Below, piece after piece: positions 3,041 through 25,500 of a stretch of 64,000 bases of DNA; positions within the stretch are counted from its first letter, which is position 1, and each line of letters starts with the position of its first letter. The DNA comes from Ruditapes philippinarum (Eukaryota). The stretch is taken from NCBI RefSeq assembly GCF_026571515.1, contig NW_026856455.1:186001-250000 (forward strand), read 5' to 3'. The translations under genes and the position numbers were made by a program. The notes under the pieces were generated by a model that was not told the DNA's origin, ran no database searches, and saw only the letters and a list, made by a program, of their open reading frames with translations.

Positions 3041-4485
3041 TGACTCGAATCAGAACCAAATAATCTTATTTGAAAATTAACTATCCTACAAATTTAAAGA
3101 TAAATATTTAAAATGCACCGAAAATGATAAATGATCCACACTAGTTAAACATATTACTTATTTTTTCAAACATTTTAAAAACAATATTTCATTTAGTATC
3201 TAATCAATATGTAACTAATTAACAACATCCCCCATGATTATCTATACGAAAATAACCTTCAGTCATTCTATAAATAGATATTCACCGAAAAGCATTCTTG
3301 AACTAACACTAAACCTTTGAAAACCATTGTAAAATCAATATTCACCTAAAAGCATTTTTTCAATCAACATTTATATAAAACCATTCCCATAACAACTTCA
3401 ATCTAAATCATTGTAAAATCAGTATTTCATCACATATATCATTGTTAATTCAGCATTCCACTAGCTTATTACAATCCTAAAATCGACATTCCAGCTAAAT
3501 CATAACCTAAAGTAACAATCCATAAGAAACCATTGTCTCAAATCATGATAAATCCAAATATATCACACCGTTAATATATCTAACACTTCAAAAATATGAA
3601 AGAATAGTTTTCCTACATGTGCTGTATGTTAATTCCAATTTATTAATCACATATTAAAGATTGTCAGGGTGGCATTTTGATTCTGTTTAGTCCATATTTA
3701 TACATATCTATGTATTTAGTTGAAAAAGAAAGTGTGCAGTTAGTTATTTTAAAAATCTGTTTACATACAAAAGCAAAGTAGTGGCAAATTTGGTTTTAAA
3801 TTTGCAGAAATGTATTGATAATACAATGGTTTAATTTGTACTGAAATTTGATAGTCAGATAATTATTTAGTTTCGTGAAAAAAGCGGAAGGGTAAAAAGT
3901 CAAAGTTGCAGAATTGCAGTATCTGTTTTGCTAATCTTAGCTATGAATCAACGAAAATGTTTGGGACTGTATGGTACAGACACAACGCCATATGGACTTG
4001 GGTTTGAATTGTGTTCCAGGCAAAAATACAAGTATCCAAATGCACAATACTGCTTTTAAAAAAGGCACTATTCTGCAACTTTTACTTTTTTATCCCTCAG
4101 CTGTTAACACGTACTATTCGGAGAGAAAGAAAAAATCAAATTTCAATAAAATTTAATCCATCGTGTAGTCAATACATTTCTGCTAATTTTGATGCCAAAT
4201 AATGCCAATACTTTGCTTAAATTAGTATAAAGAGTGTCCCAGTAACCAAGGGCACACTTTCTTTTCCAACTGAGTATATTTTATCTATCATCATGTCATG
4301 AAATCTTTTATGTTAAATATATGAATGTTTTAATGTGTTTTCGTGTAAATGTACTATTTGTATTTAGATAGTTTTTTGTCTGATTTTATTTCACATGTTT
4401 TTATTAACTTTTTGTAGGAAAATGGAGTTTTTATTTTGACAGGCAAATAAAGTGATTTTTATACTAAATGATTTTGTTTTATTGT

Positions 4486-4527: not shown

Positions 4528-5630
4528 AGTAGATATGCATTTGTCCATACAGCAATTGGGAAACTTTTAGACTTGATTTTGTGTTTTTTTTTTGTTTCAA
4601 CAAAATCACAATGTTTTTAAATTTTCTAATAAAAATAGCTTTTATGATGTACAACATGTCACAGAGCTTTAAGGGATAGAATACACATTTAACTGAAGTG
4701 ATAGTGCCATGTTTGAATATTATATTCTTTTTATCATTATCCAATTTTATCTACATAATAAATAACGTGCAAATGAGCCAGTCTATAGTCGACCGTTCTA
4801 AAACTTAACCGTTGAGAGAGGTGACAACTGAGGCAGTGTCACTTACTTCATTTGCTTCGCCTCTGTTGAAGTTCGGCTCCGCCTTAAATTGTCCATATTA
4901 AATTTGATATTATGCTCCATATGCTAGCATTTAGTCTTCGTTGACGGGGTAGAAGGGGACCATGACAACTGTGATCAATATCACTTGTCGAATTATTAAA
5001 TTACAAGTTACAAAGCCTAAACCACGCCCACTATCAGAGAGGCGGTTCTCTGGTTCTCACTCAACCGTTAAGAAAGTACAACAAACCGGTTAGGCTACGG
5101 CCTGTAAGGGGAGATCACTGCAGAACAGTTTGTACTCGAAATCATTCGAACATTATGCAATTCATACCAACATTTAAATGGGTATATTCTCGGCACATAT
5201 TGTCTTGAATTTATTTCAAGTATACCAATCATTTCAATTTTATTTGTTAGCCAATTTATTTTGATTCGACCAGACGTTTAAGTCTTTGTCGCAACAGACA
5301 AACATTTAAGAATTTCAGACCTGGCATTATTTTGTGAATTTAGGATAAGGTTCTCCTTTTGCACAAAAATATGCAACTTTATTATTAAACAACGAGCACA
5401 TACCAAGAACATGGAGAAAAAATTGATTTGTGCTTCGGATATTCAACTGTAATAGAGAACGTTTTTCAATGCTGATTGACTGTTCACATCATTTGGCGGC
5501 GTCTTTGATGTGCAGCATCAACATTTAACTTGTTCTTCTCTGTGAAATTGTCAATATATATTTGTTGGTTACCAGGTTTTATTTATTTATGCGAAGACTG
5601 GTTATTTTGCAAGTGCGGTTTCAGAGATGC

Positions 5631-6113
5631 TACTAGATGGTTATTCGTAATTCCCAATAATTTACAGATGGTGGTTGGTAATTCAATACACTATCACCAG
5701 CATGAAATATTAGAAAATATCTTACATTTTTCAAACACAGAATAAAGGAGGGTATCTGGCCGGTTATTCGTATGTAACCCCCAGCTACCAACCAGAGGGT
5801 AGTTGTTTACTCGAACTTTGCATGCCCCCCCCCCCCCCCGGATATATGACAAGATAGTTGAACTCTACAAGGAAGCACACCGGTCTCCCTATGACCACTT
5901 TACTAGAGCAAATGTAACGGATATATAATAAGATAGGTGTTTTCTTCAGCATAGCAACATCCCCTCCCTCATACATCCATCAGAAGACTCAGTTGGTTTT
6001 TCGCGCGAATCCCAAAATCTTTTCATGCTGGTGATAGCGGACTGAAATACCAACTACCAGCCGTTGAATACAATGTATTTGGGAATTACGAATAACCAAT
6101 TACCACCTAGTAT
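5631..6113. mobile_element. MITE/foldback-like element with terminal inverted repeats
   Basis: tggttattcgtaattccca (5638-5656) inverted at 6080-6098; internal ggttattcg and taccaactacca submotifs; no ORF. Confidence 0.5.
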
Positions 6114-7027
6114 GGAGTTAGTTAGTTATTCGAATATCCAACTACCAACTGCCTACTAAATTAACGCTCATCTAGAAATGATAGATTCATAAAATTATAC
6201 CCAACTTCTCCCCCCCCCCCCGAAAATTGTTGCTTTTTGGTTATAGTAATTGAATTAATTTATCTTGTCATTTTTCTAGCAGTGTTTATTCTAAGTAACA
6301 CGTGACATTTAATTCTATTATGAAATACAGTAGCGCCGGTCTATATTTACTCTCTGGAAAATAATTATTCCTAAAAAAGATGTGTCCTTTGTGTCGGTTT
6401 CTCGGAAAACCATATCTTGTTATCTTGTCGTGTATTGATTTAAAGTAAACGAAAAAGCTGGATTTTTTTCAACAGGTTTAATGTATAATATATTGTTTTG
6501 ATTCACATAATATATTTAAATGTCAACATTTTTATAAACGTCACAATCCGACAAAGCATATGCATGGCCTTTCAAGCAATATACACAAAAATCTATCATT
6601 TTTCCACTCCTTCATTGGCGTCAAATATAACGGTTTGTCATACTAATACACTCTGAAATAAATATATTTAAAAAATCAGAATATATTTTCACGAATACTT
6701 TACTGGAATATTACGTGTCACACAATCAATTGTTTATATTCATATGAAATTTTGCGACTTTTACTGCTAAATAAGATTATGTAATAACTTTAAACGAAAT
6801 AAGTCATATCAAAAACTCTAAAAAAAAACAAATCTGAATCCATACAGGTATTTGAGTTGCACTAGTTATACATTTGTATAAAGATAAAATGTCATCAGCT
6901 TCTATAAACCTACTAAATATAATACGGAGATAAAAGAAAACAACCCTTTAGTACATTGTTAATGTTCAGGCCAAAAGACCTGTGTATAGATGCACAAAAC
7001 TGAGTTTCCTTATTTGATTTGCCATAC

Positions 7028-13500: not shown

Positions 13501-16500
13501 CTCTGCGAATGACTTCAAAACAAAGGCTGTGAGCCTGAAAATCGGATAGGAAGCACTTAAACACATCAAAAGATATTAAATGTCTATACAGTTACAATGA
13601 TGATCATTTCTCTAATTTTTTTGTACTTTTTATATTGCAGTTTACTGTGAACATTATTCTATTTAAGTCGGTGTCACACTGTCCTGAAACTGACATACAA
13701 TGGATTTTTTATATAGTTAGAAATTGACCGAGCAAGAACGATGACCACAAAGGGTTACACATTTAAACCTGAGACAACACGAAAATGAATCAGAAAGTCC
13801 TTCAGAATGAGATGCTACTATTTTTGTACTGTCGGGGCTTAAAAGACATCGATTATTTTACGTGGACTTCAGGTAGCTTATATATTTAAGATTATTTTCG
13901 AATCTGAAGTTTTAATCATGTGGCATCTCCTGCGGGACAATCTTACGATGTCAATGCAAACAAAATACAATCAAAACTTATGGAAAGCCTTTCCCAATAT
14001 TAACACATCAAACTGAAGACGATATCAACTAATTGCTTTTCCAAAATGCAACAATTAAGAAAGTCACTAGTATACTAACAAAACCAAGATTTAAAGGCCA
14101 CCTTTCATTGATTCACGATCTGCTTTTGAATTGAAATTTAAAAAAGTCATTTTACCACCAAATGCCGTGTGAAACTTGAAAAAATGTGATAAACGATATC
14201 TAATTTTATGAAAAATACTCACCATAAGCTTCCCTCATTATCTTTGTAACCAAATGCACTGAATGAACCGTCGTGTCTCTGATATGTCAGTTGTCTTTGA
14301 TATCCTGTAGTAAAAAAGGTTCAATAGCCTTTTAAACTTGTTACAATACTAGTTTATCACACAAGCATTTTCTTTGTTCACGTGTAGATATAAAAATTAA
14401 CATGAATCTTGAGACATGCTGCTTTAAATGACATTGTTAACACTATTCCTATCTCAAACAGATGGAGCAGCCAGGATATATTTACATGATATAATATATG
14501 CAGCCAACCTGTTATTCCAGAATTACAATATATAAAAGAAATCTCAAAAGAAATGGAATAAAAAGTCTCCAAAGAAATGGAATAAAAAGTCAAGTGCTTT
14601 TTTGTTTCCTTATTGTTTTTTGTTGTTGTTTTTCTTATGTTAAAAATGTAAATATTTCATGTATGTACATTTTTTTAAAATTGTTTGCATCAATTAATTT
14701 TATTATTGACAATTTATTTCACAATATACATAAAAAAATGATATTTTGCAAACCTGTTTCCATTATATACTCGACTCGTTCCTTCATAGCATCACTGTAT
14801 CTGTTGGTAACTTTTAAGTATTTTGCTGCGAAGACAGCTGGTGCGAACCGGACCATGTTCTGTTCTCCACACCCATAAGGAATCTTGATCAGCTGATCTA
14901 AGTGATCCATAGAGGGACCAAACATGTCGCCTATAAACAAAGTTTGGTTACAATTACATCTGATAAGTATGATAGTCGTGGTCTGGCTGTTTCAATTGGG
15001 TGGCACAAAACCGATGTAAAATTCTGTTGTAGGAAATAACTTTAAATCTTTAAAGGTTATATTCAATAACATTTGTATATCTTAGCCTGATCAATACTCT
15101 TTTTTTTTGTTTTTGTTTTTTTGTGTGTCTAACTGTTCTTGTGTTTGTTGTTGTTATGTTAGACTGCTCCTGCAAACAAATATTTAATACAAAAGAATTC
15201 GTTGCAACGTCATGTTATGCCCATTTCCCGCATAAACGATTTATTTCGACAAGAAGAAATGGTTTCATAAAATAACGATTTTTACTGAAGGAACGGCGTG
15301 ATAAGACAAACCAAACTTGGTAGAACCTAAGTAATTATCTATGAATTAATCTCTAATATTTCAATATAACATTATCATCGATATTTTCCTTGTGTCGGAT
15401 CCGGTCTAAAATCAGTCTTGGCTAAGTTACCTATCACTGTTATTTGTATTCTCTGAGAGTCTGGAACTATTCTTAATGGATAGATAACTGGAACATCTTT
15501 CTCAAAGTTACCACCATTGTCAAGTGATATTAGCACAGGTACATTGTTTTCTTCTTGTTGTCCTGGTGGCTGGAAATAAAATGAATGAATGAAATATTGA
15601 ATGAAATAATGAAATGAATAAAGTAAAACGAATATTTTTATTGTGCAACTACATAAATGTACATGCTATATTTTTAAGTATAAATGATAAATATTTTTGA
15701 TACTTAATCATTTTGATAATTGCAATACATTTCATACAGTAACTATCTAATTTAAAAGAAATGACTCTGACACAGTCATTGTACAGGTGGAATGGGATGT
15801 TTCTACATTGCAAAAGAAACACAAAGAAAATCCTTCGATGAAGTAGTAGATGTGTTTAAATATTTGAATAGCTTTCTTGCTGTATGAATGAAACTTGCAA
15901 ATGTTTTGACAGTTTTGACATTTTCGACATTTTATTAACAGAAAATTTGCATGTTATCAAGAAAAAATGAGATGTAACAACATTATTTGCAATATTAAAT
16001 TAAAATAATTTTGCATATTTATTTATATCTGAGCCATTTTTGGAAAGAAGAACATTTTTGTTTCTAATATCATTTATTTTCTGACGAGCCATATTCTAAT
16101 TGAGTACATATTACAAGTAGTACTTGCAATATGACTAGATTACCCTAAGCAATTTGTAAATGTAGTTGAAGTTGACATTTTTACAAAGTGTTGCCCTAAT
16201 GTCCACTCTTAATGATCTAAAGATTTATAATGTTTGCACTTCTACTCATCATAATTGTAAGGTCACAAGTTGAAGTTTAATTATGTCCTTTTAACTTACT
16301 CTGACAATAAGTTGACGAATAACAGTGTCTCTACCCCTGGGCGATGATGCTTCAACTTCAAGGGTTATTGTCCCTGTCTTTTGTGCTTTAATTGTGAAAT
16401 ACGCCGAGTGGGCATCGTTGGATTTTACCTGCAAAACAAATTGCTTTAAAGACGGAACGGACATTAAACACATCAAACACAAAGAATGAATCATCAAATA

Positions 16501-19500
16501 CTGAACCAACTTTACATAAACAAATCATAATTGAAAAGCAATAATAGAACAAACGTCGTGACTTGTCTGAATCAAATTCATCATCGTATTTTTATAAAAT
16601 CTCTGTTTATTTTTGTTGCTGTAGCTCGTACTTTTTTCATTGGATTTAACCCGTGGTGGTGGTGTTGGTAGTTTACCCTTCGGATCAAGACAGTAACTCC
16701 CTTCCACAAGGTACAAAAGCACAGTTCAGCCACCGCAACGTCCCCGGGAAGGTTGCTAATCAGTTTACCAGAACTAGTGCCTTCACTTAAATAATGTTAG
16801 TAATGTAATGGCCAGGCCTTACAATCATGATATTGAATTAATTCTAAAGTCAATTTAAACATTTACATTAATTTCTTATTTTTCAAAGACTTCATTAAAA
16901 CATTGAAAACTATAATTATTTACCAAAATACATTTTTTGACTCTGTCTTTCGTCTCCTCCTCCTTGCCATATCTGTTTACAGTTATACCAAGGAATTCCT
17001 CTGATGAATTCTTTAAAGACACGGTTACCTGAAATGACAATAACATGGTTTCAAGAAAGACAACAAGTCAAAAGGTCCTCTTCAAATATAAAATTGAAAA
17101 CTTTTTAAGTAATAAGATGCATCTAGAAATAAAATTAAACAGGAGATCCCTTCAGAGCAATGGCAACAAACTCTGATTGACTTTTTGTATAGTTCTGCAT
17201 TAATAAGTTTGATAAATGAGCAACAATTTTCAAATACCCGTTGGCTTATGCAGTATTAAATTTCAAGATAAATAAAATTGAACTCATTAGTATCATCAGA
17301 AAATTGTGACTTCACTGACTATAATTACGTAAGCAATAATTGATTTCACATATCAACCAAGTTATCTATGTATTCAAGAAAGAAAAGGGTCCCCATTGCA
17401 TATATGAGAACAACAATGTGTCTTATTATTTATTAAATTTCTGTAGGAGTCACACAAAAACTGAGGTAATTTAATTGATGGTTGAAATGAACATGATGCA
17501 AAAAATATCGACAAGCAAAGGATGAAATTGAAACGTTAAATAAGAGTTAATGTATATATGCTATGGTAAAAGTAAAAATATACTATAGTAGCTTATATAA
17601 ACATTAGAATTATGTAATAGAAATGTTGTTAATATTAATACTTACATACATATCATGTGGGTAGTAGTTAAACACAAGAGCTTGAATAACCGCCACTTCT
17701 CCAGACACGATGGAAAATGGTAAATGAAGGCTGACGAAAAACGGAAGGTATGCTGTCACCTTTATAAATTAGTAACACATCAAATAATAATAATACTTAT
17801 TTAGTTATCTTATTCGATTCCTTATTGTCAAAAGGATAAACTTTCATGTCAGATCGTTAAAGATCGGTCTAATTCGTCATACCCCGTAACTTATATAATC
17901 ATTGGACGCTAACATGGGCTAGATGAAGCAAAGATCTTGTCAACTTGCGACTGCCTTTACAAAAAACTTGCGGTAAAAGACGAAAACTATCAAAGTTTCA
18001 TCAGCATACAATTTATCTTAAATCATTAAAAACCTTTGCAAACAGAATTGTTCATAAAAGGACAAGTCAAGACAAATATACATATGGCAGACCCCCGCTA
18101 ATATAAGAATGTGGTATACAAACAAAAAACTAATTTACATTAGCAGGGACTGGAGCAACACCGAGACCAGATTCTGCATTGAGAGCATATCCTGTAGCCA
18201 CCCAGTCGGTTATTGTATCTGGTACAGTTGCGGTCATGACCACATTTCCGGTAGAGCTATAAAGATAATTATATACAATGTATTAATAAAAGAATACTAC
18301 TTAAAGATATAATGTGTTCATCCTTGTATAAAATTTTTAATCTGCGAAAATTCTTAAAATCTAAAAATTCTTACTGATTATATCTAATTTTAATAAAAGA
18401 ATGAATAAACTTAGTATTTGAAGCTGTGTTCCCTATTACAGGTCAAATAAAGTTGTTGTTTTTCTTTACAAAAATACCAGTGTTTAACGACATTATATAT
18501 TCACACTGAAACCACCTATAGTATGTAGAATTTAAAACTACCTTATGTGAAGTCAAAACATGTTTTATATATATTGTATATCAAATCTGAGCATAATATA
18601 TCTTTAAGAAATAACACAAACTCTAAATTTTAAATTATAGTGGTAGCGCTTTCAATATTTGTTGTGCATATCATCAGCCGAATATTTAATCAACAAAAAT
18701 AAACATGGAGTTTGTTGTTATTTCTTAAATGTTATAACATATTATTTATTTCAACACTGCACAAGGAACATTTAAATCACGTTTTAATGTACAATGTTCA
18801 TGTATATTTACATAGATACAAATAGGTTCGTCTTTTAACATTTACTGTTTGATTTATAACAAAACCATTACTTTATGTTGATTCATGGAAAAAAGGAAGG
18901 AATATATTTCAATAATAACTATTATTGTATTTTAACTATTAAAGATACACAACTAATGAATATATGCGTTTTTAAGTGACAAATAAAAATTACGCTTGTG
19001 TAACATTTTCTGTGAAAGAAACGATTGCGTTTACTTCAAATTTCCTGTGAAATAAACGATTGCGTTTATAAAACATTTTCTGTGAAATAAACGCAATTTT
19101 CATTTCAAATGCTTAAGTGCTAAACAATGCTATGTGCTAAAAGAGCTCAATGATACTGAAAACCATGTTACAAACATTATACATTTCAGATTATAAGTGC
19201 AAAGACAATGTTAAAGATTTATTTTATTTGTTTGTTTAATTTGACGGATTCGTTTCATATGATGCACAATATACAAATACGTATAATTTTTAAGGATAAA
19301 TAATGATTTTTTATAAAAAATAAGTTTGTTCAATTATGATAATGCTTTAGTGTATTAACATTTTACATCGAGTTATCTTTTCCCTTCTATTAAGCAGATA
19401 TTAATCAGTCCCTGTAAGCCAGCCATACCTGACAGATGTATTAGACCAAATCCAAGTCTCTGGAAAATCTTTTCTCACAGTTGTAGTTAAAGTACAAAAT

Positions 19501-22500
19501 GGCGGCGGGCATTCGCAAGAATATTTTGAACCAGGTGAACATGGGTTAGGTGATGATTCATAAATGCTGTCAATATCAGTAACAAAATACCCATTTCTAC
19601 TGTTAATCTCCATCTGAACTATAAAAAGATTGATACCTGTTTACAACATTGGTGACTAAATATAATATTTTTATTGCCCATTTAACAGGACTTGGAAGAA
19701 TCACATTGTCAGTAATGTGCTTCTTTCAGTTAAATAGCAAGTGATTTTTACACATAACGTTGCATCCATAGACTTGGATTGACTTAAATCTGTCAGGTTT
19801 GGGGGTCACACATTTAGACAAGCTGCAAGACAAAGAGAAAAGAGAGAAACCACTGCTTTTATGTAAAGGGCATACGGATTGACTCGATTTTACTTTGACT
19901 TTGAACGCCCTTTACTTTCACTGTTACCTGACAGACTCATTGGCCCATAACCAAGTCTCTGGGAAATCTTTGCGAATCGTTGTTCTGAAAGCACTTAAAT
20001 ATCTTCCTTGTGTGGATAAACATCCGGGACCATAACATTCATTAATGTCCATTCCTTGGCCGGAAGCTGCCCAAGAAGCACCCCTATCAACATATGGAGA
20101 TTGCTCTTCTATTTGGCGTTTAACTAAAATTGAAATCAATTGTTTATTTCAAACAGGAAACAGTCTTTTGCATTTATAAACAAAGGAATGGAAATTAATT
20201 ATATCTCAGAAAAACGCAATGTTGGATACGAGGGGCTTTATTTTTCTTTTGGAAAATTTAGATTGTGTTACCACCCAAACATCAAAATGTAGATTTTTGA
20301 TGGGATGTAACTTTCAAATTTGTCAAATGCTTAGTAAAAGAAACTAAATCAAGTAAGGGCGCCAATATGAATGTTAATTTCATGTTAATATGACTTAAAC
20401 AGAAAAAAGAATGCATTATAATGATTATATAGTATAATTGTACCTTTTCACAACAAAGCGACAAAAAACCTTCAATGTTCAAATGATTCTTAAATAAATA
20501 ACAAGAAATAATTGAATAAAATAGGTTTAGGTGCATGGTCTTACCAGTTGTTCAATACACTTTGAAAACGAGTAAACGATATGGTTTCATGTTGATCAAA
20601 TTTTGTAATTGGCAATTTTATTATCTGGAACGATATATAAGTAAGTGCACGTCCTTCATGGGCACTATACTAGTACATCATTTAAAATATTAAAAATAAT
20701 TGTACTCACGTTTCATGAAGTTAAAGTCATGCAACAATGCATCTGTAATCACCGAAAGACCGACGTTCTGTAAAATAGTATGGCTGTGAAATATGCGAAA
20801 TTTGAACATGAATAAAGACAATCCTTTAACCATTTGCTAATTTAAATATGTATGTTATATCCTACCTAACTTTAGCCAATAAAAGCTAACAATTATGTCC
20901 TATAAAGGTCTATAAATTTTCTCATACCAAAATCTCATTATGTCTTATGGAATTCTAGTCTCAGGAAAAAATAAGTAATCCGACCGGATGCTTGAAAGAT
21001 TTTAGCAGTGAAACATTTTTTAAACAAACGGTATAGCTCTCTCTTGCCTATATTAGTAATGTTTTTTTCCATTCCCTGTCATGGCAGGCCATTAAATAAT
21101 GTGTATTGTAATACAATGCGATTAAGGTGGGATTTTTTTCGTAGGGGAGGATCCTCGGGATCAGCATTTATATGAAAAAGTACGTAATAACTAAAGATTG
21201 TATAAGAATATATTCATGAAAAGTATTATACTAGTAAAATATTTCACTTCTTAACCCCCCACCCCAGCACCGACCATCGCAGTATTCAATTTTCAACAAT
21301 GTTTATACACTTACATTAAAAATACCAACAACATCGTTACTTGATACTCTTCCATACAAGTAGGAATCTTGGTATTTCCATCCTGGTCTTTCATACACTC
21401 CAAGTTTATTGTACACCTGTTTTGTAAAACATTAATTTGTAAAATGTAATATCATAATTCGAAAATGTCCAGCGAGATTCAAAAAATATTCTGTACTGTT
21501 TCTTTATAGTTTCAAAGCAGTTCTGTTTACTTCCACCTTGAAAGATTCTAAGAAAAATTCACTTGTTTTATAAATTTTGTATAATCGTATATGTTGACAA
21601 TGTACAGTCAAAACTGCCATAGTGACCCACTGTACATAGTGACTTCCTGTCTTATGTGAACCTGTTCTCCTCCCACCCATTTTTTTCGGTTATAAAGTTG
21701 CACTGTATTAAGCAAGTGACTGAGTTACGTTACTAACGACCTTGACTTGTATGGTCCGGAATGTGCATATCAATGTTTTTAGCGACTATGTCATAAAAGA
21801 TATCTCTGTTCTTACTCCTTGTCTGGTTAAAAAATGCCAGAATCAAATAAAAACGTATTGTTTTAGATCTTCAACAGAAGTATGAAGCCATACAAAAACT
21901 GAATATTAAGAGAATACCAGCGTATAAAGTTGCTGAAGAACTAGGTGTTGGAAACGCACAGATCCAGAACCTTCGTTAACGTAAAATAGAAGAAATTTCG
22001 GACTTTGTAAATAATGATCATACGAATACTTAACGTCATATTTTGGTACTTTTGTTACTTTTATTATGCTTGTTAGTAATTTGAATGTACATTATTACTA
22101 ATTGTCAAAAATGAATTTTACCCTCTTTTCGGTGATGTCATTTCCGGTTTTATGCAATATTACACTTTTATCTACAGCAAGAATAAAAACTTGTGAACCA
22201 GGATCAGCCCTGATGTTTAAAGAAACGTTAGTTCCTGGCGAGACTTGGGTCCTGTCGAATTTTAGGCTCACCTGAAAAATGCATTCACCACACATTTGTT
22301 ATACCTCTTACTAATTTTTTATGATATGATATGAAAGTATAGGAGATAAGTTATTAAATAAATGATCGTTTGTAACAGGTTTTGGTGTAATAAAAACAAA
22401 TAACATTGTATGAAGTATAAAGATTTTAAAAGCAATGTAAGTCAGATTTTACAATCAAGTATTGAATAAAAAGTATCAGTATTTATGCCCATTTTGGTGT

Positions 22501-25500
22501 ATGGCAATTTAGACAAAGATTGCTTAAATTGGCGACACACAAAATCCAGTCAAGACGGTCATTGTTTATTTTTACATTTGTCATTGTACAAAACTCTTTC
22601 TGCTTAGAAATGGTCTTAACTGGGTTGTATAAAACCGTTAAAGGTCTGAGTCGATATCACACGTATGTCTTCGGCATTATGTACCGCCTACTGTCCGTTC
22701 GGCAGACAATTCAACCGACAATAAACCAGTGTGTGGCAACCAACTAACTATATGTATGTTTAAAACATATGCTTACAAAAAAGATATAAGAGAAAGAGAT
22801 AAAAAGCAGAAATCGAGAGAAGTAAATCATCCTGTTTTCGAAAATATATGCATGTATTATGGATACAAAAATTCAGAGCTCAAGCTTACATCGTTTTGGA
22901 AATGCATATCAACCGTAAACGTGATGGCGTCAGCAATGATCTCACTGTGTTTATCGTTGTAGTAATAAGCAAGAAGAATACAGTCCGGAACCATCTCTGA
23001 CGTCATTGTCACGTAGAATGTGTTCTTTTGGTAAACAGATGCAATATGGGTAAAATGTGTCTGAATAATCCGTCCATTCTTGATAATCTGAAAATATGGG
23101 AGATTACTAATTGATCGTATGTTACAGAGTGTGTTGAAAAGAAATGGTATTAAATGATGTACGAATAACGGATATCCTTGTGCGATTATAAAGATTTTAA
23201 AATCAATTTGACTATTGCGAAATATTTCATTTCAATTAATGTATTGCATGATTTAAGCTATAACAAATGCATGATCAAAACAGGCGGTATAACCGTAATA
23301 TGGTTTGGTTGGTTTATGTGACATAAACCATTTACATACCATTTACATATTTGCCCATCATCTAGATTATCAAAATCTTTACAAAATAATGATATAGGAA
23401 TGATTACGAATTCTTAACATGCATCGTCTTTGAGAAATGTGCTAAGACAGCAAACGTCGTAACAAAATTATCAACAAGTTCGGGCTTCGCAACCTCACAT
23501 GAATAGGTTCGGGCATCAAATAAAGTATAATTCACAAATATTTTAAGGTAAAATTCTACTTACATGGTAAGTGACCTTTCCGTTTGGTCTGACATTACTT
23601 CTTACACTGAACTCTGCCTGCTTACCAACCTATTCCCAATACAAGTAGGTCACATATAGAATAAATACTATGCAATTATTTTTGCTAATAAGAAACACTA
23701 AGAAATCTAATCTCTAATTGTAATAGGTTATTATATGAAGAGTAATTAGAATTTAAAGAGGCTTAGTTAACATATGGTTCAAATAAACACATTTGAAATG
23801 TTAGTCTTCTTATTATGTTTTTATGTAAATGACATAAAATATATAGACGTTTTGTACCAAATTAATCTAAACTTATCAAATGCCTTTGAAATACAGATAT
23901 TACTGAATAAAAATGTGTTGTTTTTTTTCCGATATCATGACGATATCATGTTGATATTTGTTGATATCATGTTGATATTAAGATGATGTTATGTTAATAT
24001 CACGGTGATATCATGTTGAAATATGTTGATATCATGTTGAAATCATGTTCATGTTGCAACATACCTTTACAAACGAGGATTTCATCTCAAGATGTAAATA
24101 CGATTTACTTGCTGTACGGAAACGCTGGATGTTCTTAGATATTTTCTCATCCTTTAATTTCACCTGTAATTATATGTTAAATTATGCTTATATTTGATTT
24201 GATTTTTGTTGCATTTAAAGTCATATAGAAATTGTGGTATATCAGGATTGCAGATAATACCGACCGAATATCGGCATATTATACTATTCTTTTAATTTTC
24301 TTTTATATTACAATGTACAGTTTTATCAAAATTTAAAAAAAACATAGAAAATTACAGTGTACATGTTAATGCAAACTTGATGACGCAAAAAGTTATTAAA
24401 ACGTTTTCGTTGATTATGCCTCATATGCTTTACAAGGCACAAATAGACACATGGGTATACATAGGAACAAAAAATAATGTTGTTCCAAAGTATGCAAATG
24501 CCTGGGAAAGAAGAGCTACATGTATCAGTAAATGTTTTTATGAATAGAGAGCCGCGCGACATTTATATGCAGCACTTTGCTATCTTGAATATCATAAGTA
24601 ACATTCAACTTACGTCAATATGCCCAGTTGCGACATTCACCGGAATATCAAGTTCCAATTTAATAATTCCATCACGTGGTACAGACAAAAACATTTCCGG
24701 CATAAATATTACATTTCCGTCGGGAAACGGTGATAGAAACTCCATCAAGTTGGACGAAGGACTATTTGGCGGTCTGACAGGTGCTGATACACCGGTTTCC
24801 TTGTCGGTAAAATATGTAACGCCAATACGGACTCTATCCCCAGATTGTGTCAAAGGTCGACCATCAGGTTGTGTGATCTTTATCTACAAGACAACATGAT
24901 AGTCGAATACAATGCACAGTTATCAAAAGAAACTGGTTTTATTTTTTGCCCAAAAATACCAGTTATAATTCAAACTTATCACAGTGGAAGAAATTGTTCG
25001 AAAAGAATTCGAACAAGGAATAAATGTCTATAAAAATATTACTTTATTTTACTTTTCCAAGTAATATTAACCAGTACAAAGTGAGACTTAATCTAAAATT
25101 ATTGAAATATACACCATTTTGAATAGTATGGTTAAATCGAATACAGGTTTGACCAATCGCAATGTATGTCATTTGAAAGCGTTCGTACTTGTTCAAAAGA
25201 CATTTCATACTTGTGAATATATAGGTTTAAATTGATAAATATACTCAATCTTACATAGGTTGTATATTTAAATTCTGGTTTGAACGAGTCATCACCATAC
25301 GACAGGAACTCAAGTTTAAGCGGTCTCTCGTGAAAGGTTATGGTGCTCCTGGCTACACGGATCTCTCCTGTCTCGTCCTCGGTCACGTTGGCCTCTACGG
25401 TCAGGGTATCATACTTCAGCGAAGGATCAAACTTCAACAAGGTGTCAGTGGCAATACTAAAGTCTGCTTCACCGTCGATCTGTTAAATCACCGAAATACA

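What the first reader, a model, noticed from the sequence alone, without database searches (positions are those of the whole stretch)
19765..19798. Antisense decoy of the shared exon end and 5' splice site between the two alternative TEP exons: candidate RNA-structure splicing switch
Seen: the 309-nt intron between exons A and B holds an inverted copy of their conserved 3' end. Against exon B there are two exact co-linear 11-nt blocks (AGACTTGGATT and ATCTGTCAGGT); against exon A, AGACTTGG and TCTGTCAGGT. The second block spans the exon|GT junction. In the pre-mRNA the element can pair with either exon A (about 130 nt upstream) or exon B (about 300-335 nt downstream), but not both at once. Established: competing RNA pairings drive mutually exclusive splicing in Dscam-type clusters, usually via intron-intron docking/selector pairs that activate an exon. 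Inference: here the logic appears reversed, with one shared antisense element masking the donor of whichever exon it binds, using the protein-constrained FPETW codons as the common target. I know of no description of this in a TEP, but cannot search.
Basis: partly seen in the sequence, partly recalled or inferred. Interest (0 to 1): 0.85.

Follow-up and report, generated by a model that had tools for sequence, protein, structure and literature searches.

The report
Antisense exon-end copy between alternative TEP exons
A clam immune gene (a thioester protein) has two alternative exons, and the intron between them holds a short backwards copy of the second exon's end that could fold over that exon's splice site; this is a plausible but untested splicing control of a kind already known in other genes.

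Summary
The gene on the minus strand belongs to the A2M/TEP superfamily. RNA contigs from four studies show two alternative bait-region exons: A (19928-20123, 196 nt) and B (19429-19618, 190 nt). No A-B joint was seen, and both lengths leave a remainder of 1 when divided by 3.

The 309-nt intron between them holds a 38-42 nt inverted copy of the exon B end plus its donor, at 19765-19802. The gapped alignment scores 42, against 20 +/- 2.6 for shuffles.

In silico the element is bistable. Before exon B is transcribed it pairs with the exon A end (-40.6 kcal/mol, P about 0.73). In the full transcript it pairs with the exon B end (-45 kcal/mol, P about 0.87), which buries the B donor. This agrees with A looking like the commoner form.

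Function is not shown:
- No orthologous intron could be reached, so conservation is untested.
- None of about 63 other FPETW exon ends has such a copy. These include a 7-exon and a 2-exon TEP cluster in the same genome.
- About 1% of random 45-mers in this window have an equally good inverted partner.
- The element is derived from B, so the A pairing may be incidental.

The masking logic is not new: ATE1 uses one shared intronic element to hinder one of two 3' splice sites. The scan had noted the exon pair (s1-804151), but had not noted this element on other DNA.

The parts
19765..19802 (-). Intronic antisense element. As RNA it reads 5'-CCAAACCUGACAGAUUUAAGUCAAUCCAAGUCUAUGGA-3'. It has two helix-forming blocks, 19788-19798 and 19770-19780, separated by a 7-nt spacer. 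The predicted duplex extends to 19764-19806.
   Evidence: (I2, I6, I18, I22)
19423..19464 (-). Exon B 3' end (FPETW codons through SV) plus donor positions +1 to +6. This is the primary pairing partner and the source of the inverted copy: 37 predicted pairs (1 G-U), -45.4 kcal/mol.
19926..19962 (-). Exon A 3' end plus donor GU, the alternative partner. There are 28 predicted pairs (3 G-U), including an unbroken 14-bp helix over exon positions -12 to intron +2; -40.6 kcal/mol.
19928..20123 (-). Alternative bait-region exon A, 196 nt. It has the higher contig depth in the four RNA runs, which is only a rough guide to abundance.
   Evidence: joints 18256^19928 (4 runs) and 20123^20710; translation
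19429..19618 (-). Alternative bait-region exon B, 190 nt, apparently the minor form. Its 5' two-thirds are highly polymorphic.
   Evidence: joint 18256^19429 (X16); contigs ending exactly at 19618 and 19429 (X16, X20); translation
19619..19927 (-). The 309-nt intron between exons A and B, which holds the element.
20710..20767 (-). Upstream constitutive 58-nt exon, joined to exon A in RNA contigs.
18137..18256 (-). Downstream constitutive exon (start of the Pfam A2M domain), joined to A or to B.

Best explanation
The element is a short inverted duplicate of the last 38 nt of exon B plus the first few intron bases. It lies about 300 nt upstream of its source, in the intron between the two alternative bait-region exons of a clam TEP gene.

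Proposed mechanism: in the pre-mRNA the element forms a long-range interrupted duplex with the exon B end. The duplex buries the B donor (exon -10 to intron +2 in a perfect 11-bp helix, and +4 to +6 also paired) and encloses the B acceptor and exon body in a loop of about 300 nt. The element is already present when the B donor emerges from the polymerase, so it can compete with U1 at once. B is therefore disfavoured and A is the default exon.

The A end shares the FPETW codons and the TCTGTCAG|GT junction, so the same element can instead fold back on the A donor in nascent RNA. Transcripts in which that happens would leave the B donor free. That would couple use of B to masking of A.

Shown here: the sequence anatomy, the alternative use of A and B in RNA, and the predicted energies and pairing probabilities.

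Inferred: that the duplex forms in vivo, that it changes the A/B ratio, and that the A pairing matters.
For: - The co-linear inverted copy is far above shuffles (42 against 20 +/- 2.6).
- Duplex energies are -43.6 to -45.4 kcal/mol for B and -40.6 for A. Random 45-mers against their 400-nt flanks in the same window average -19.1, sd 5.3, with a 1% tail at -32.5. The six other exon ends of the gene give -15.6 to -26.8.
- In partition-function folds the element pairs with the A end (P 0.73) in every truncation ending before the B donor. It pairs with the B end (P 0.85-0.88) once the B donor is included, and the B donor is then only 0.12 unpaired. An independent fold of 19415-19810 closes on the same stem, z = -2.8.
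- RNA contigs from 4 studies use A or B and show no A-B joint. A contigs are the deeper ones, as expected if B is the masked exon.
- The element is single-copy, so it is not a transposon. It matches no Rfam family.
- It is unchanged in the unspliced contig of another individual that spans it, although that contig differs at 4 positions just 8-27 nt from the element.
- Differences between the element and the B end concentrate in the spacer between the two helices: 4 of 6 events fall in 11 of 42 columns (my count).
- A working precedent exists for a shared element in the intervening intron that masks one of two splice sites (ATE1, PMC7797038).
Against: - No cross-species conservation or covariation could be obtained.
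- The element is absent from every other TEP alternative-exon cluster examined. These cover 7 exon ends in the paralogous cluster on C2261, 21 further FPETW exon ends in this genome including a second two-exon pair on C2438, and 35 exon ends in 22 metagenome loci. The best inverted score among them is 24.
- About 1% of random 45-mers in this window have an equally good inverted partner. With many exon pairs inspected by the scan, one coincidence at a donor is not unlikely.
- The two perfect 11-mers imply either constraint or a young age, and these cannot be told apart here.
- Frame incompatibility with nonsense-mediated decay suffices for mutual exclusivity.
- B is still used at an appreciable level, so any masking is partial.
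- The loops are 126 and 300 nt long, so folding has to compete with protein binding and with co-transcriptional splicing.
Confidence: 0.42

Rival explanations
1. Neutral relic. A short replication template-switch, or a templated insertion, copied about 42 nt of the exon B end in reverse into the nearby intron. The copy is young, is decaying, and has no appreciable effect on splicing. Its position at a donor of an alternative exon pair is coincidence.
For: - The homology has sharp borders. Nothing beyond 42 nt aligns, as expected of a short template switch (mechanism described in PMC5453318 and PMC8794818).
- The copy derives from B only.
- Inverted pairs of this quality occur about once per 10 kb in this window.
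- No equivalent exists in about 63 other FPETW exon ends, including two other alternative-exon clusters in the same genome.
- Flank divergence is 2 of 31 positions. That is only a few times the between-individual intron divergence of about 2-4% seen, so a recent origin is possible.
Against: - A duplex of -45 kcal/mol over a donor is physically likely to have some effect, whatever its origin.
- The spacer has diverged far more than the two helices (2 substitutions plus 4 deleted bases in 11-15 nt, against 2 substitutions in about 31 nt), which uniform decay does not predict well (roughly p = 0.04).
- The chance that one of two specific donors falls in such a pair is about 2%.
Confidence: 0.42
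2. One-way silencer only. The element represses exon B by masking its donor and looping the exon out, which sets A as the default. The complementarity to exon A is a passive by-product of A/B homology and plays no part, so there is no toggle.
For: - The element is B-like at all diagnostic positions, and the A match is not significant by sequence.
- At equilibrium, pairing with A is essentially nil (P below 0.02) once B is present.
- The A donor is transcribed about 130 nt before the element, which gives U1 a head start.
- A has the higher contig depth.
Against: - The A duplex is still -40.6 kcal/mol, with a 14-bp helix over the donor.
- It dominates every fold of transcripts that end before the B donor.
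- This reading overlaps the best explanation, which already includes it as the core effect.
Confidence: 0.12
3. Pure chance complementarity, with no common origin and no function.
For: Each ungapped arm alone is only marginally unusual.
Against: Two co-linear arms lie in the same order and spacing class, and the matches extend on both outer sides. The gapped score is 42, against a shuffle maximum of 33 in 300 trials.
Confidence: 0.02

Closest known systems
ATE1 exons 7a/7b competing-structure module R1-R3 / R3-R4 (Kalinina et al. 2021, PMC7797038)
   Same: - Two tandemly duplicated, mutually exclusive exons.
- One element (R3) in the intron between them is complementary to two homologous sites, one per exon.
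- The two pairings exclude each other.
- The authors state that the pairings act by hindering one of the two splice sites so that only one is exposed.
   Different: - In ATE1 both partners are intronic, lie just upstream of each exon, and mask 3' splice sites. Here the partners are the exon 3' ends plus the donors, so the 5' splice sites and protein-coding sequence are involved.
- The ATE1 elements are conserved across vertebrates and validated by disruptive and compensatory mutants and by antisense oligonucleotides. Here nothing is validated and conservation is unknown.
Docking-site / selector-sequence systems of arthropod exon clusters (Dscam1 exons 4, 6 and 9, 14-3-3zeta, Mhc, MRP1, srp; reviewed in PMC6071210 and PMC4691838)
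   Same: One site competes for several duplicated complementary sites in a tandem exon array, and only one pairing forms at a time.
   Different: - There the pairs are intron-intron, and pairing activates the neighbouring exon.
- Here the pairing is intron-exon, spans the donor, and is predicted to repress.
- Here there are only two exons.
Duplication model for the origin of competing structures (Ivanov and Pervouchine 2018, PMC6071210)
   Same: The two partner arms (the A end and the B end) are homologous because the exon was duplicated, and they share one complementary arm.
   Different: - In that model the single arm predates the duplication.
- Here the single arm looks like a later inverted copy of one of the duplicates (B-like, including intron +4 to +6), so its origin differs.
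Structure-mediated repression of chicken beta-tropomyosin exon 6B (Clouet d'Orval et al., Science 1991, listed as reference 98 of PMC5224494) and 5' splice-site stem-loops such as MAPT exon 10 and SMN2 exon 7
   Same: RNA structure sequesters one exon of a mutually exclusive pair, or a donor site, and lowers its use. The details of these cases are from my own knowledge; only the existence and title of the 1991 paper were seen.
   Different: Those are one-exon structures with no shared element that can swap partners, and they are in vertebrate genes.
Mutually exclusive bait-region or hypervariable exons of invertebrate TEPs (Biomphalaria BgA2M, BgCD109 and BgTEP2 with 12 exons; Chlamys farreri CfTEP with 6; Drosophila TEP2; PMC7016707)
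   Same: Same gene family, same position (between A2M_BRD and A2M), and the same conserved C-terminal FPETW part of the alternative exons.
   Different: Those reports describe the isoforms, not a mechanism. A library search found no paper that holds docking site, selector and mutually exclusive together with Tep.

Membership tests
A2M/TEP superfamily gene with alternatively spliced bait/variable region | A2M_BRD, A2M and thioester (TED) domains, with the GCGEQ motif | tested here: met
   Pfam PF07703 (22101-22295), PF00207 (18133-18243 and 17613-17759) and PF07678 (14722-14940). PYGCGEQ is in the ORF at 14719-14940.
A2M/TEP superfamily gene with alternatively spliced bait/variable region | Tandem homologous exons between the bait-region domain and the A2M domain, used one at a time in mRNA | tested here: met
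   Joints 18256^19928 (4 runs) and 18256^19429 (1 run), with no 19928^19618 joint. The exons are 196 and 190 nt in the same phase. These are contigs, so rare double inclusion cannot be excluded.
Competing-RNA-structure control of mutually exclusive exons (docking/selector type, ATE1 type) | One element complementary to two or more alternative sites, one per exon, with pairings that cannot coexist | tested here: met
   The same nucleotides, 19765-19798, pair with the A end or the B end. Pairing probabilities switch from A to B. This is in silico only.
Competing-RNA-structure control of mutually exclusive exons (docking/selector type, ATE1 type) | Partner sites are intronic elements next to each variable exon | tested here: not met
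   The partners are the last 35-36 exonic nucleotides plus intron +1 to +6.
Competing-RNA-structure control of mutually exclusive exons (docking/selector type, ATE1 type) | Evolutionary conservation and/or compensatory substitutions of the paired arms | not testable with these tools
- There is no protein homologue of exon A in either protein collection.
- The metagenome pattern scan was empty.
- The genome has no relatives in the genome search.
Competing-RNA-structure control of mutually exclusive exons (docking/selector type, ATE1 type) | Disruptive mutations change exon choice and compensatory mutations restore it | not testable with these tools
   This needs a minigene or genome-editing experiment.
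Template-switch-derived inverted repeat | A short reverse-complement copy of a nearby source, with sharp borders | tested here: met
   The copy spans 42 columns, lies 300 nt from its source, and has no homology beyond.
Template-switch-derived inverted repeat | The ancestral or outgroup sequence lacks the copy, showing a single-step origin | not testable with these tools
   No outgroup sequence is available.

The most novel reading that the evidence does not exclude
A single intronic element that mimics the 5' end of U1 (it carries ACCUG, complementary to CAG|GU) acts as a kinetic toggle between two duplicated donors. In nascent RNA it either captures the exon A donor before U1 does, which leaves the B donor free, or it stays free and captures the B donor as that emerges. 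Exactly one donor would be masked in every transcript. The selector sequences are the protein-constrained FPETW codons and the exon-intron junction themselves. This would be the first competing-structure control of mutually exclusive splicing that works on 5' splice sites through exonic arms, the first in a mollusc, and the first in an immune TEP diversity cluster.
Probability: 0.18. Interest if true: 0.7.

Novelty: new variant of a known kind. Interest (0 to 1): 0.45.

Why it matters
TEP bait-region exon clusters diversify immune recognition in molluscs and arthropods, but how one exon is chosen is not known for any of them.

If this element works, it would extend competing-structure control of mutually exclusive splicing in three ways:
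- from intronic 3'-side elements (Dscam, ATE1) to donor masking through coding sequence;
- to a new phylum;
- by showing that such a module can arise in one step, by inverted copying of an exon end.

It is also easy to test, because a 2.7-kb minigene holds everything needed.

If it is a neutral relic, it is a clean example of how template switching seeds strong pre-mRNA structures at splice sites.

Tried and rejected
1. Orthologous introns could not be reached.
- phmmer with exon A against 1.84 billion representatives gave only EGF-like repeats and three read-through TEP fragments.
- The word-index search with the exon A ORF found nothing.
- An exact or degenerate pattern for both exon ends found nothing in the metagenome contigs.
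Full-length TEP relatives were therefore out of reach of the length-limited protein search.

2. Is the element a general feature of TEP clusters? No. Neither duplex energies nor inverted-alignment scores are comparable in:
- the 7-exon paralog on C2261;
- 35 exon ends in 22 metagenome loci;
- 21 further exon ends in this genome.

The low energies in L020 are irregular pairings of G-rich glycine codons within the exons, not an antisense copy.

3. A second hairpin around the exon A acceptor (20041-20057 / 20183-20199, 17 nt with 1 mismatch) is probably chance. Its score has p of about 0.02 per region, and it vanishes in larger folds (P 0.005-0.03).

4. Synonymous-site argument. A and B share 8 of 9 synonymous third positions in their last 13 codons, but this holds inside and outside the helices alike. 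It therefore does not single out pairing constraint over gene conversion or codon bias (read).

5. Rfam: no family in 18000-21000.

6. Editing: the RNA contigs show no A-to-G pattern in the helix.

7. Searching other exon pairs of this genome through Pfam families was abandoned as too indirect.

Full report
**What is there**

The minus strand of the window carries a gene of the A2M/TEP superfamily.
- Single-exon translations hit Pfam A2M_BRD (22101-22295), A2M (18133-18243 and 17613-17759) and the thioester domain (14722-14940).
- The thioester exon holds PYGCGEQ.

Contigs of four probable RNA runs from four different studies were laid on 17100-23050. They define these exons: 22888-23050+, 22120-22269, 21315-21414, 20710-20767, 19928-20123 (A), 19429-19618 (B), 18137-18256 and 17642-17757.
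- The downstream exon is joined to A, skipping B, in all four runs, and to B in one run.
- Contigs of exon B stop exactly at its two borders in two runs.
- No A-B joint was reported.

A (196 nt) and B (190 nt) start and end in the same phase, and each leaves a remainder of 1 on division by 3. Including both, or neither, therefore shifts the frame.

Their translations are unalignable except for the last 20 or so residues (..RKDFPETW[LI]W..SV). This is the usual picture for TEP bait or hypervariable exons, whose mutually exclusive use is already described in molluscs (PMC7016707).

I did not verify that.

**The observation**

It is correct to the base. The 309-nt intron holds, at 19765-19802, an inverted copy of the exon B end. 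A gapped alignment gives 34 identical columns of 42:

TCCA-t-AGACTTGGATT..G-a-CT..TA-a-ATCTGTCAGGT-t-TGG (element)
TCCA-g-AGACTTGGATTTGG-t-CTAATA-c-ATCTGTCAGGT-a-TGG (exon B end)

- The score is 42, against 20.0 +/- 2.6 (maximum 33) for 300 shuffles.
- Homology stops sharply at both ends.
- The element agrees with B, not A, wherever the two differ, including intron positions +4 to +6. By sequence, its match to the A end is not significant (score 22, null 18 +/- 4.7).
- The intron segment is single-copy in the genome and matches no Rfam family.
- Unspliced low-depth contigs from other individuals run through the element without change, so it is real and not private to the assembled animal.

**How unusual it is**

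- Taken singly, the two ungapped arms are only marginal.
- The composite is clearly non-random against shuffles.
- Against real sequence the picture is more sober. About 1% of all 45-nt windows in the 64 kb have an inverted partner scoring 40 or more within 500 nt, which is about 6-7 pairs.
- By energy, the B end (-43.6 kcal/mol) and the A end (-40.6) lie beyond the 1% tail (-32.5) of random 45-mers against their own flanks. The more extreme values come from long inverted repeats of transposon type. The other six exon ends of the gene give -15.6 to -26.8.

**Predicted structures**

- RNAduplex gives 37 pairs (1 G-U) and -45.4 kcal/mol with the B end. The B donor lies inside a perfect 11-bp helix.
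- It gives 28 pairs (3 G-U) and -40.6 kcal/mol with the A end. This includes an unbroken 14-bp helix over exon -12 to intron +2.
- Both duplexes use the same element nucleotides, so they exclude each other.
- In partition-function folds, transcripts that end anywhere before the B donor pair the element with the A end (mean P 0.73).
- Transcripts that include the B donor pair it with the B end (P 0.85-0.88). The B donor is then only 0.12 unpaired, and the A donor 0.52-0.61 unpaired.
- An independent fold of 19415-19810 closes on the same stem, with z = -2.8.

**What could not be shown**

Conservation is the key test, and it was out of reach.
- Exon A has no homologue in either protein collection.
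- A DNA pattern for both exon ends found nothing in the metagenome contigs.
- The genome has no relatives in the genome collection.
One contig spans the whole element with no difference, although it carries four differences 8-27 nt away. This is suggestive but far too little.

**Is it a general TEP device?**

No.
- The same genome has a paralogous TEP cluster with at least seven tandem alternative exons on contig C2261.
- It has another pair of FPETW exons only 253 nt apart on C2438, and about 17 further single FPETW exons.
- Twenty-two metagenome contigs from other animals carry 35 more such exon ends, many in tandem clusters with the donor at the same phase.
- None of these roughly 63 exon ends has an inverted copy nearby. 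The best score is 24, against 42 here.
- None has a comparable duplex except irregular G-rich pairings within the exons of L020.

The element is thus specific to this gene and lineage. That fits either a recent neutral insertion or a locally evolved regulator.

**Most likely mechanism, and its rivals**

I favour, at about 0.4, the reading that the duplex forms in a useful fraction of transcripts and represses exon B.
- The element is transcribed before the B donor, so it can compete with U1 immediately. The pairing both buries the donor and loops out the exon.
- This agrees with A having the higher contig depth in all four runs (contig depth is only a rough guide).
- The two-way toggle, in which masking of the A donor in nascent RNA frees B, is an attractive extension. 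I rate it at about 0.2.

The main rival, of about equal weight, is a neutral relic of a short template switch or templated insertion (mechanism in PMC5453318 and PMC8794818).
- For the relic: sharp borders, derivation from B only, the frequency of such pairs in this genome, absence from all paralogs, and the fact that frame incompatibility already enforces exclusivity.
- Against the relic: the differences cluster in the spacer between the helices (4 of 6 events in 11 of 42 columns, roughly p = 0.04, defined after the fact). A -45 kcal/mol duplex over a donor is also physically unlikely to be without any effect.

**Comparison with what is known**

That contrast is fair.
- A closer precedent exists. 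[quoted passage not shown] It is complementary to two homologous sites, R1 and R4, just upstream of each exon. [quoted passage not shown]
- The clam element would be the mirror image of that arrangement, acting on the 5' splice sites through exonic arms.
- Structure-mediated repression of one exon of a mutually exclusive pair goes back to beta-tropomyosin exon 6B (the 1991 reference seen; the details are from my own knowledge).
- I found no paper that links RNA structure to exon choice in any TEP gene.

**Verdict**

- If functional, the element is a new variant of a known kind.
- It is an easily testable candidate, not a demonstrated switch.
- Interest: 0.45.

Noticed in passing
G000:C2261:34659-40589 (L008, L035-L041), minus strand: A paralogous TEP gene with at least seven tandem alternative bait-region exons, each ending ..FPETWLW.. 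with the donor in the same phase. It resembles the 6-exon CfTEP and 12-exon BgTEP2 clusters in the literature. No docking/selector search was done on it.
   Followed up: partly
G000:C2438:51390-51693 (L045, L048), minus strand: Two FPETW exon ends lie only 253 nt apart (..[17 protein letters not shown] and ..TRKIFPETWLWRTETVQ). This may be the second two-exon TEP noted by the scan (s1-803803). The intron between them must be very short, so steric hindrance may enforce exclusivity there. There is no inverted copy nearby.
   Followed up: partly
window 20041-20057 and 20183-20199: A 17-nt inverted repeat with one mismatch links the inside of exon A (codons QGMDIN) to the intron 60-76 nt upstream of its acceptor, so it would enclose the acceptor. 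Its score has p of about 0.02 per region, and it disappears in folds of longer transcripts. It is probably chance.
   Followed up: yes
window 19493-19564 (exon B, 5' two-thirds): RNA contigs of other individuals differ from the assembly at 7-10 of 190 positions in exon B. All the listed differences lie in the variable part and none in the last 64 nt. This points to high allelic diversity of the bait region.
   Followed up: no
window 18294-18691: An intronic stretch with very high contig depth in the RNA runs (up to 285) and many loose ends and partial joints. It looks like a repeated, transcribed element inside the intron downstream of exon B.
   Followed up: no
window 19985-20052 (exon A residues 23-44, ..[19 protein letters not shown]..): The best database hits of exon A are repeats of large EGF-like proteins (P0001-P0003, stretches aligned to residues 23-44). 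The bait exon may therefore carry a motif like a calcium-binding EGF domain N-terminus. The match is short and weak.
   Followed up: no
window 29891-30055 and 38366-38635; also 3776-4210 and 5621-6115: Strong local inverted repeats (alignment scores 48-90). The two strongest share the sequence GCCGCGTCACGACAAAACCAACATA, which suggests a transposon family with terminal or internal inverted repeats.
   Followed up: no
window 19005-19109: Three tandem 35-nt repeats (ATTTYCTGTGAAAKAAACG..) in the intron downstream of exon B, with internal inverted symmetry.
   Followed up: no
L015, L020, L024, L026, L029 (metagenome contigs); proteins P0004, P0006, P0007: Marine metagenome contigs from unidentified animals carry 3-4 tandem FPETW exons each. 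Database 'proteins' P0004, P0006 and P0007 are read-through predictions across such tandem alternative exons, so they are annotation artefacts.
   Followed up: partly
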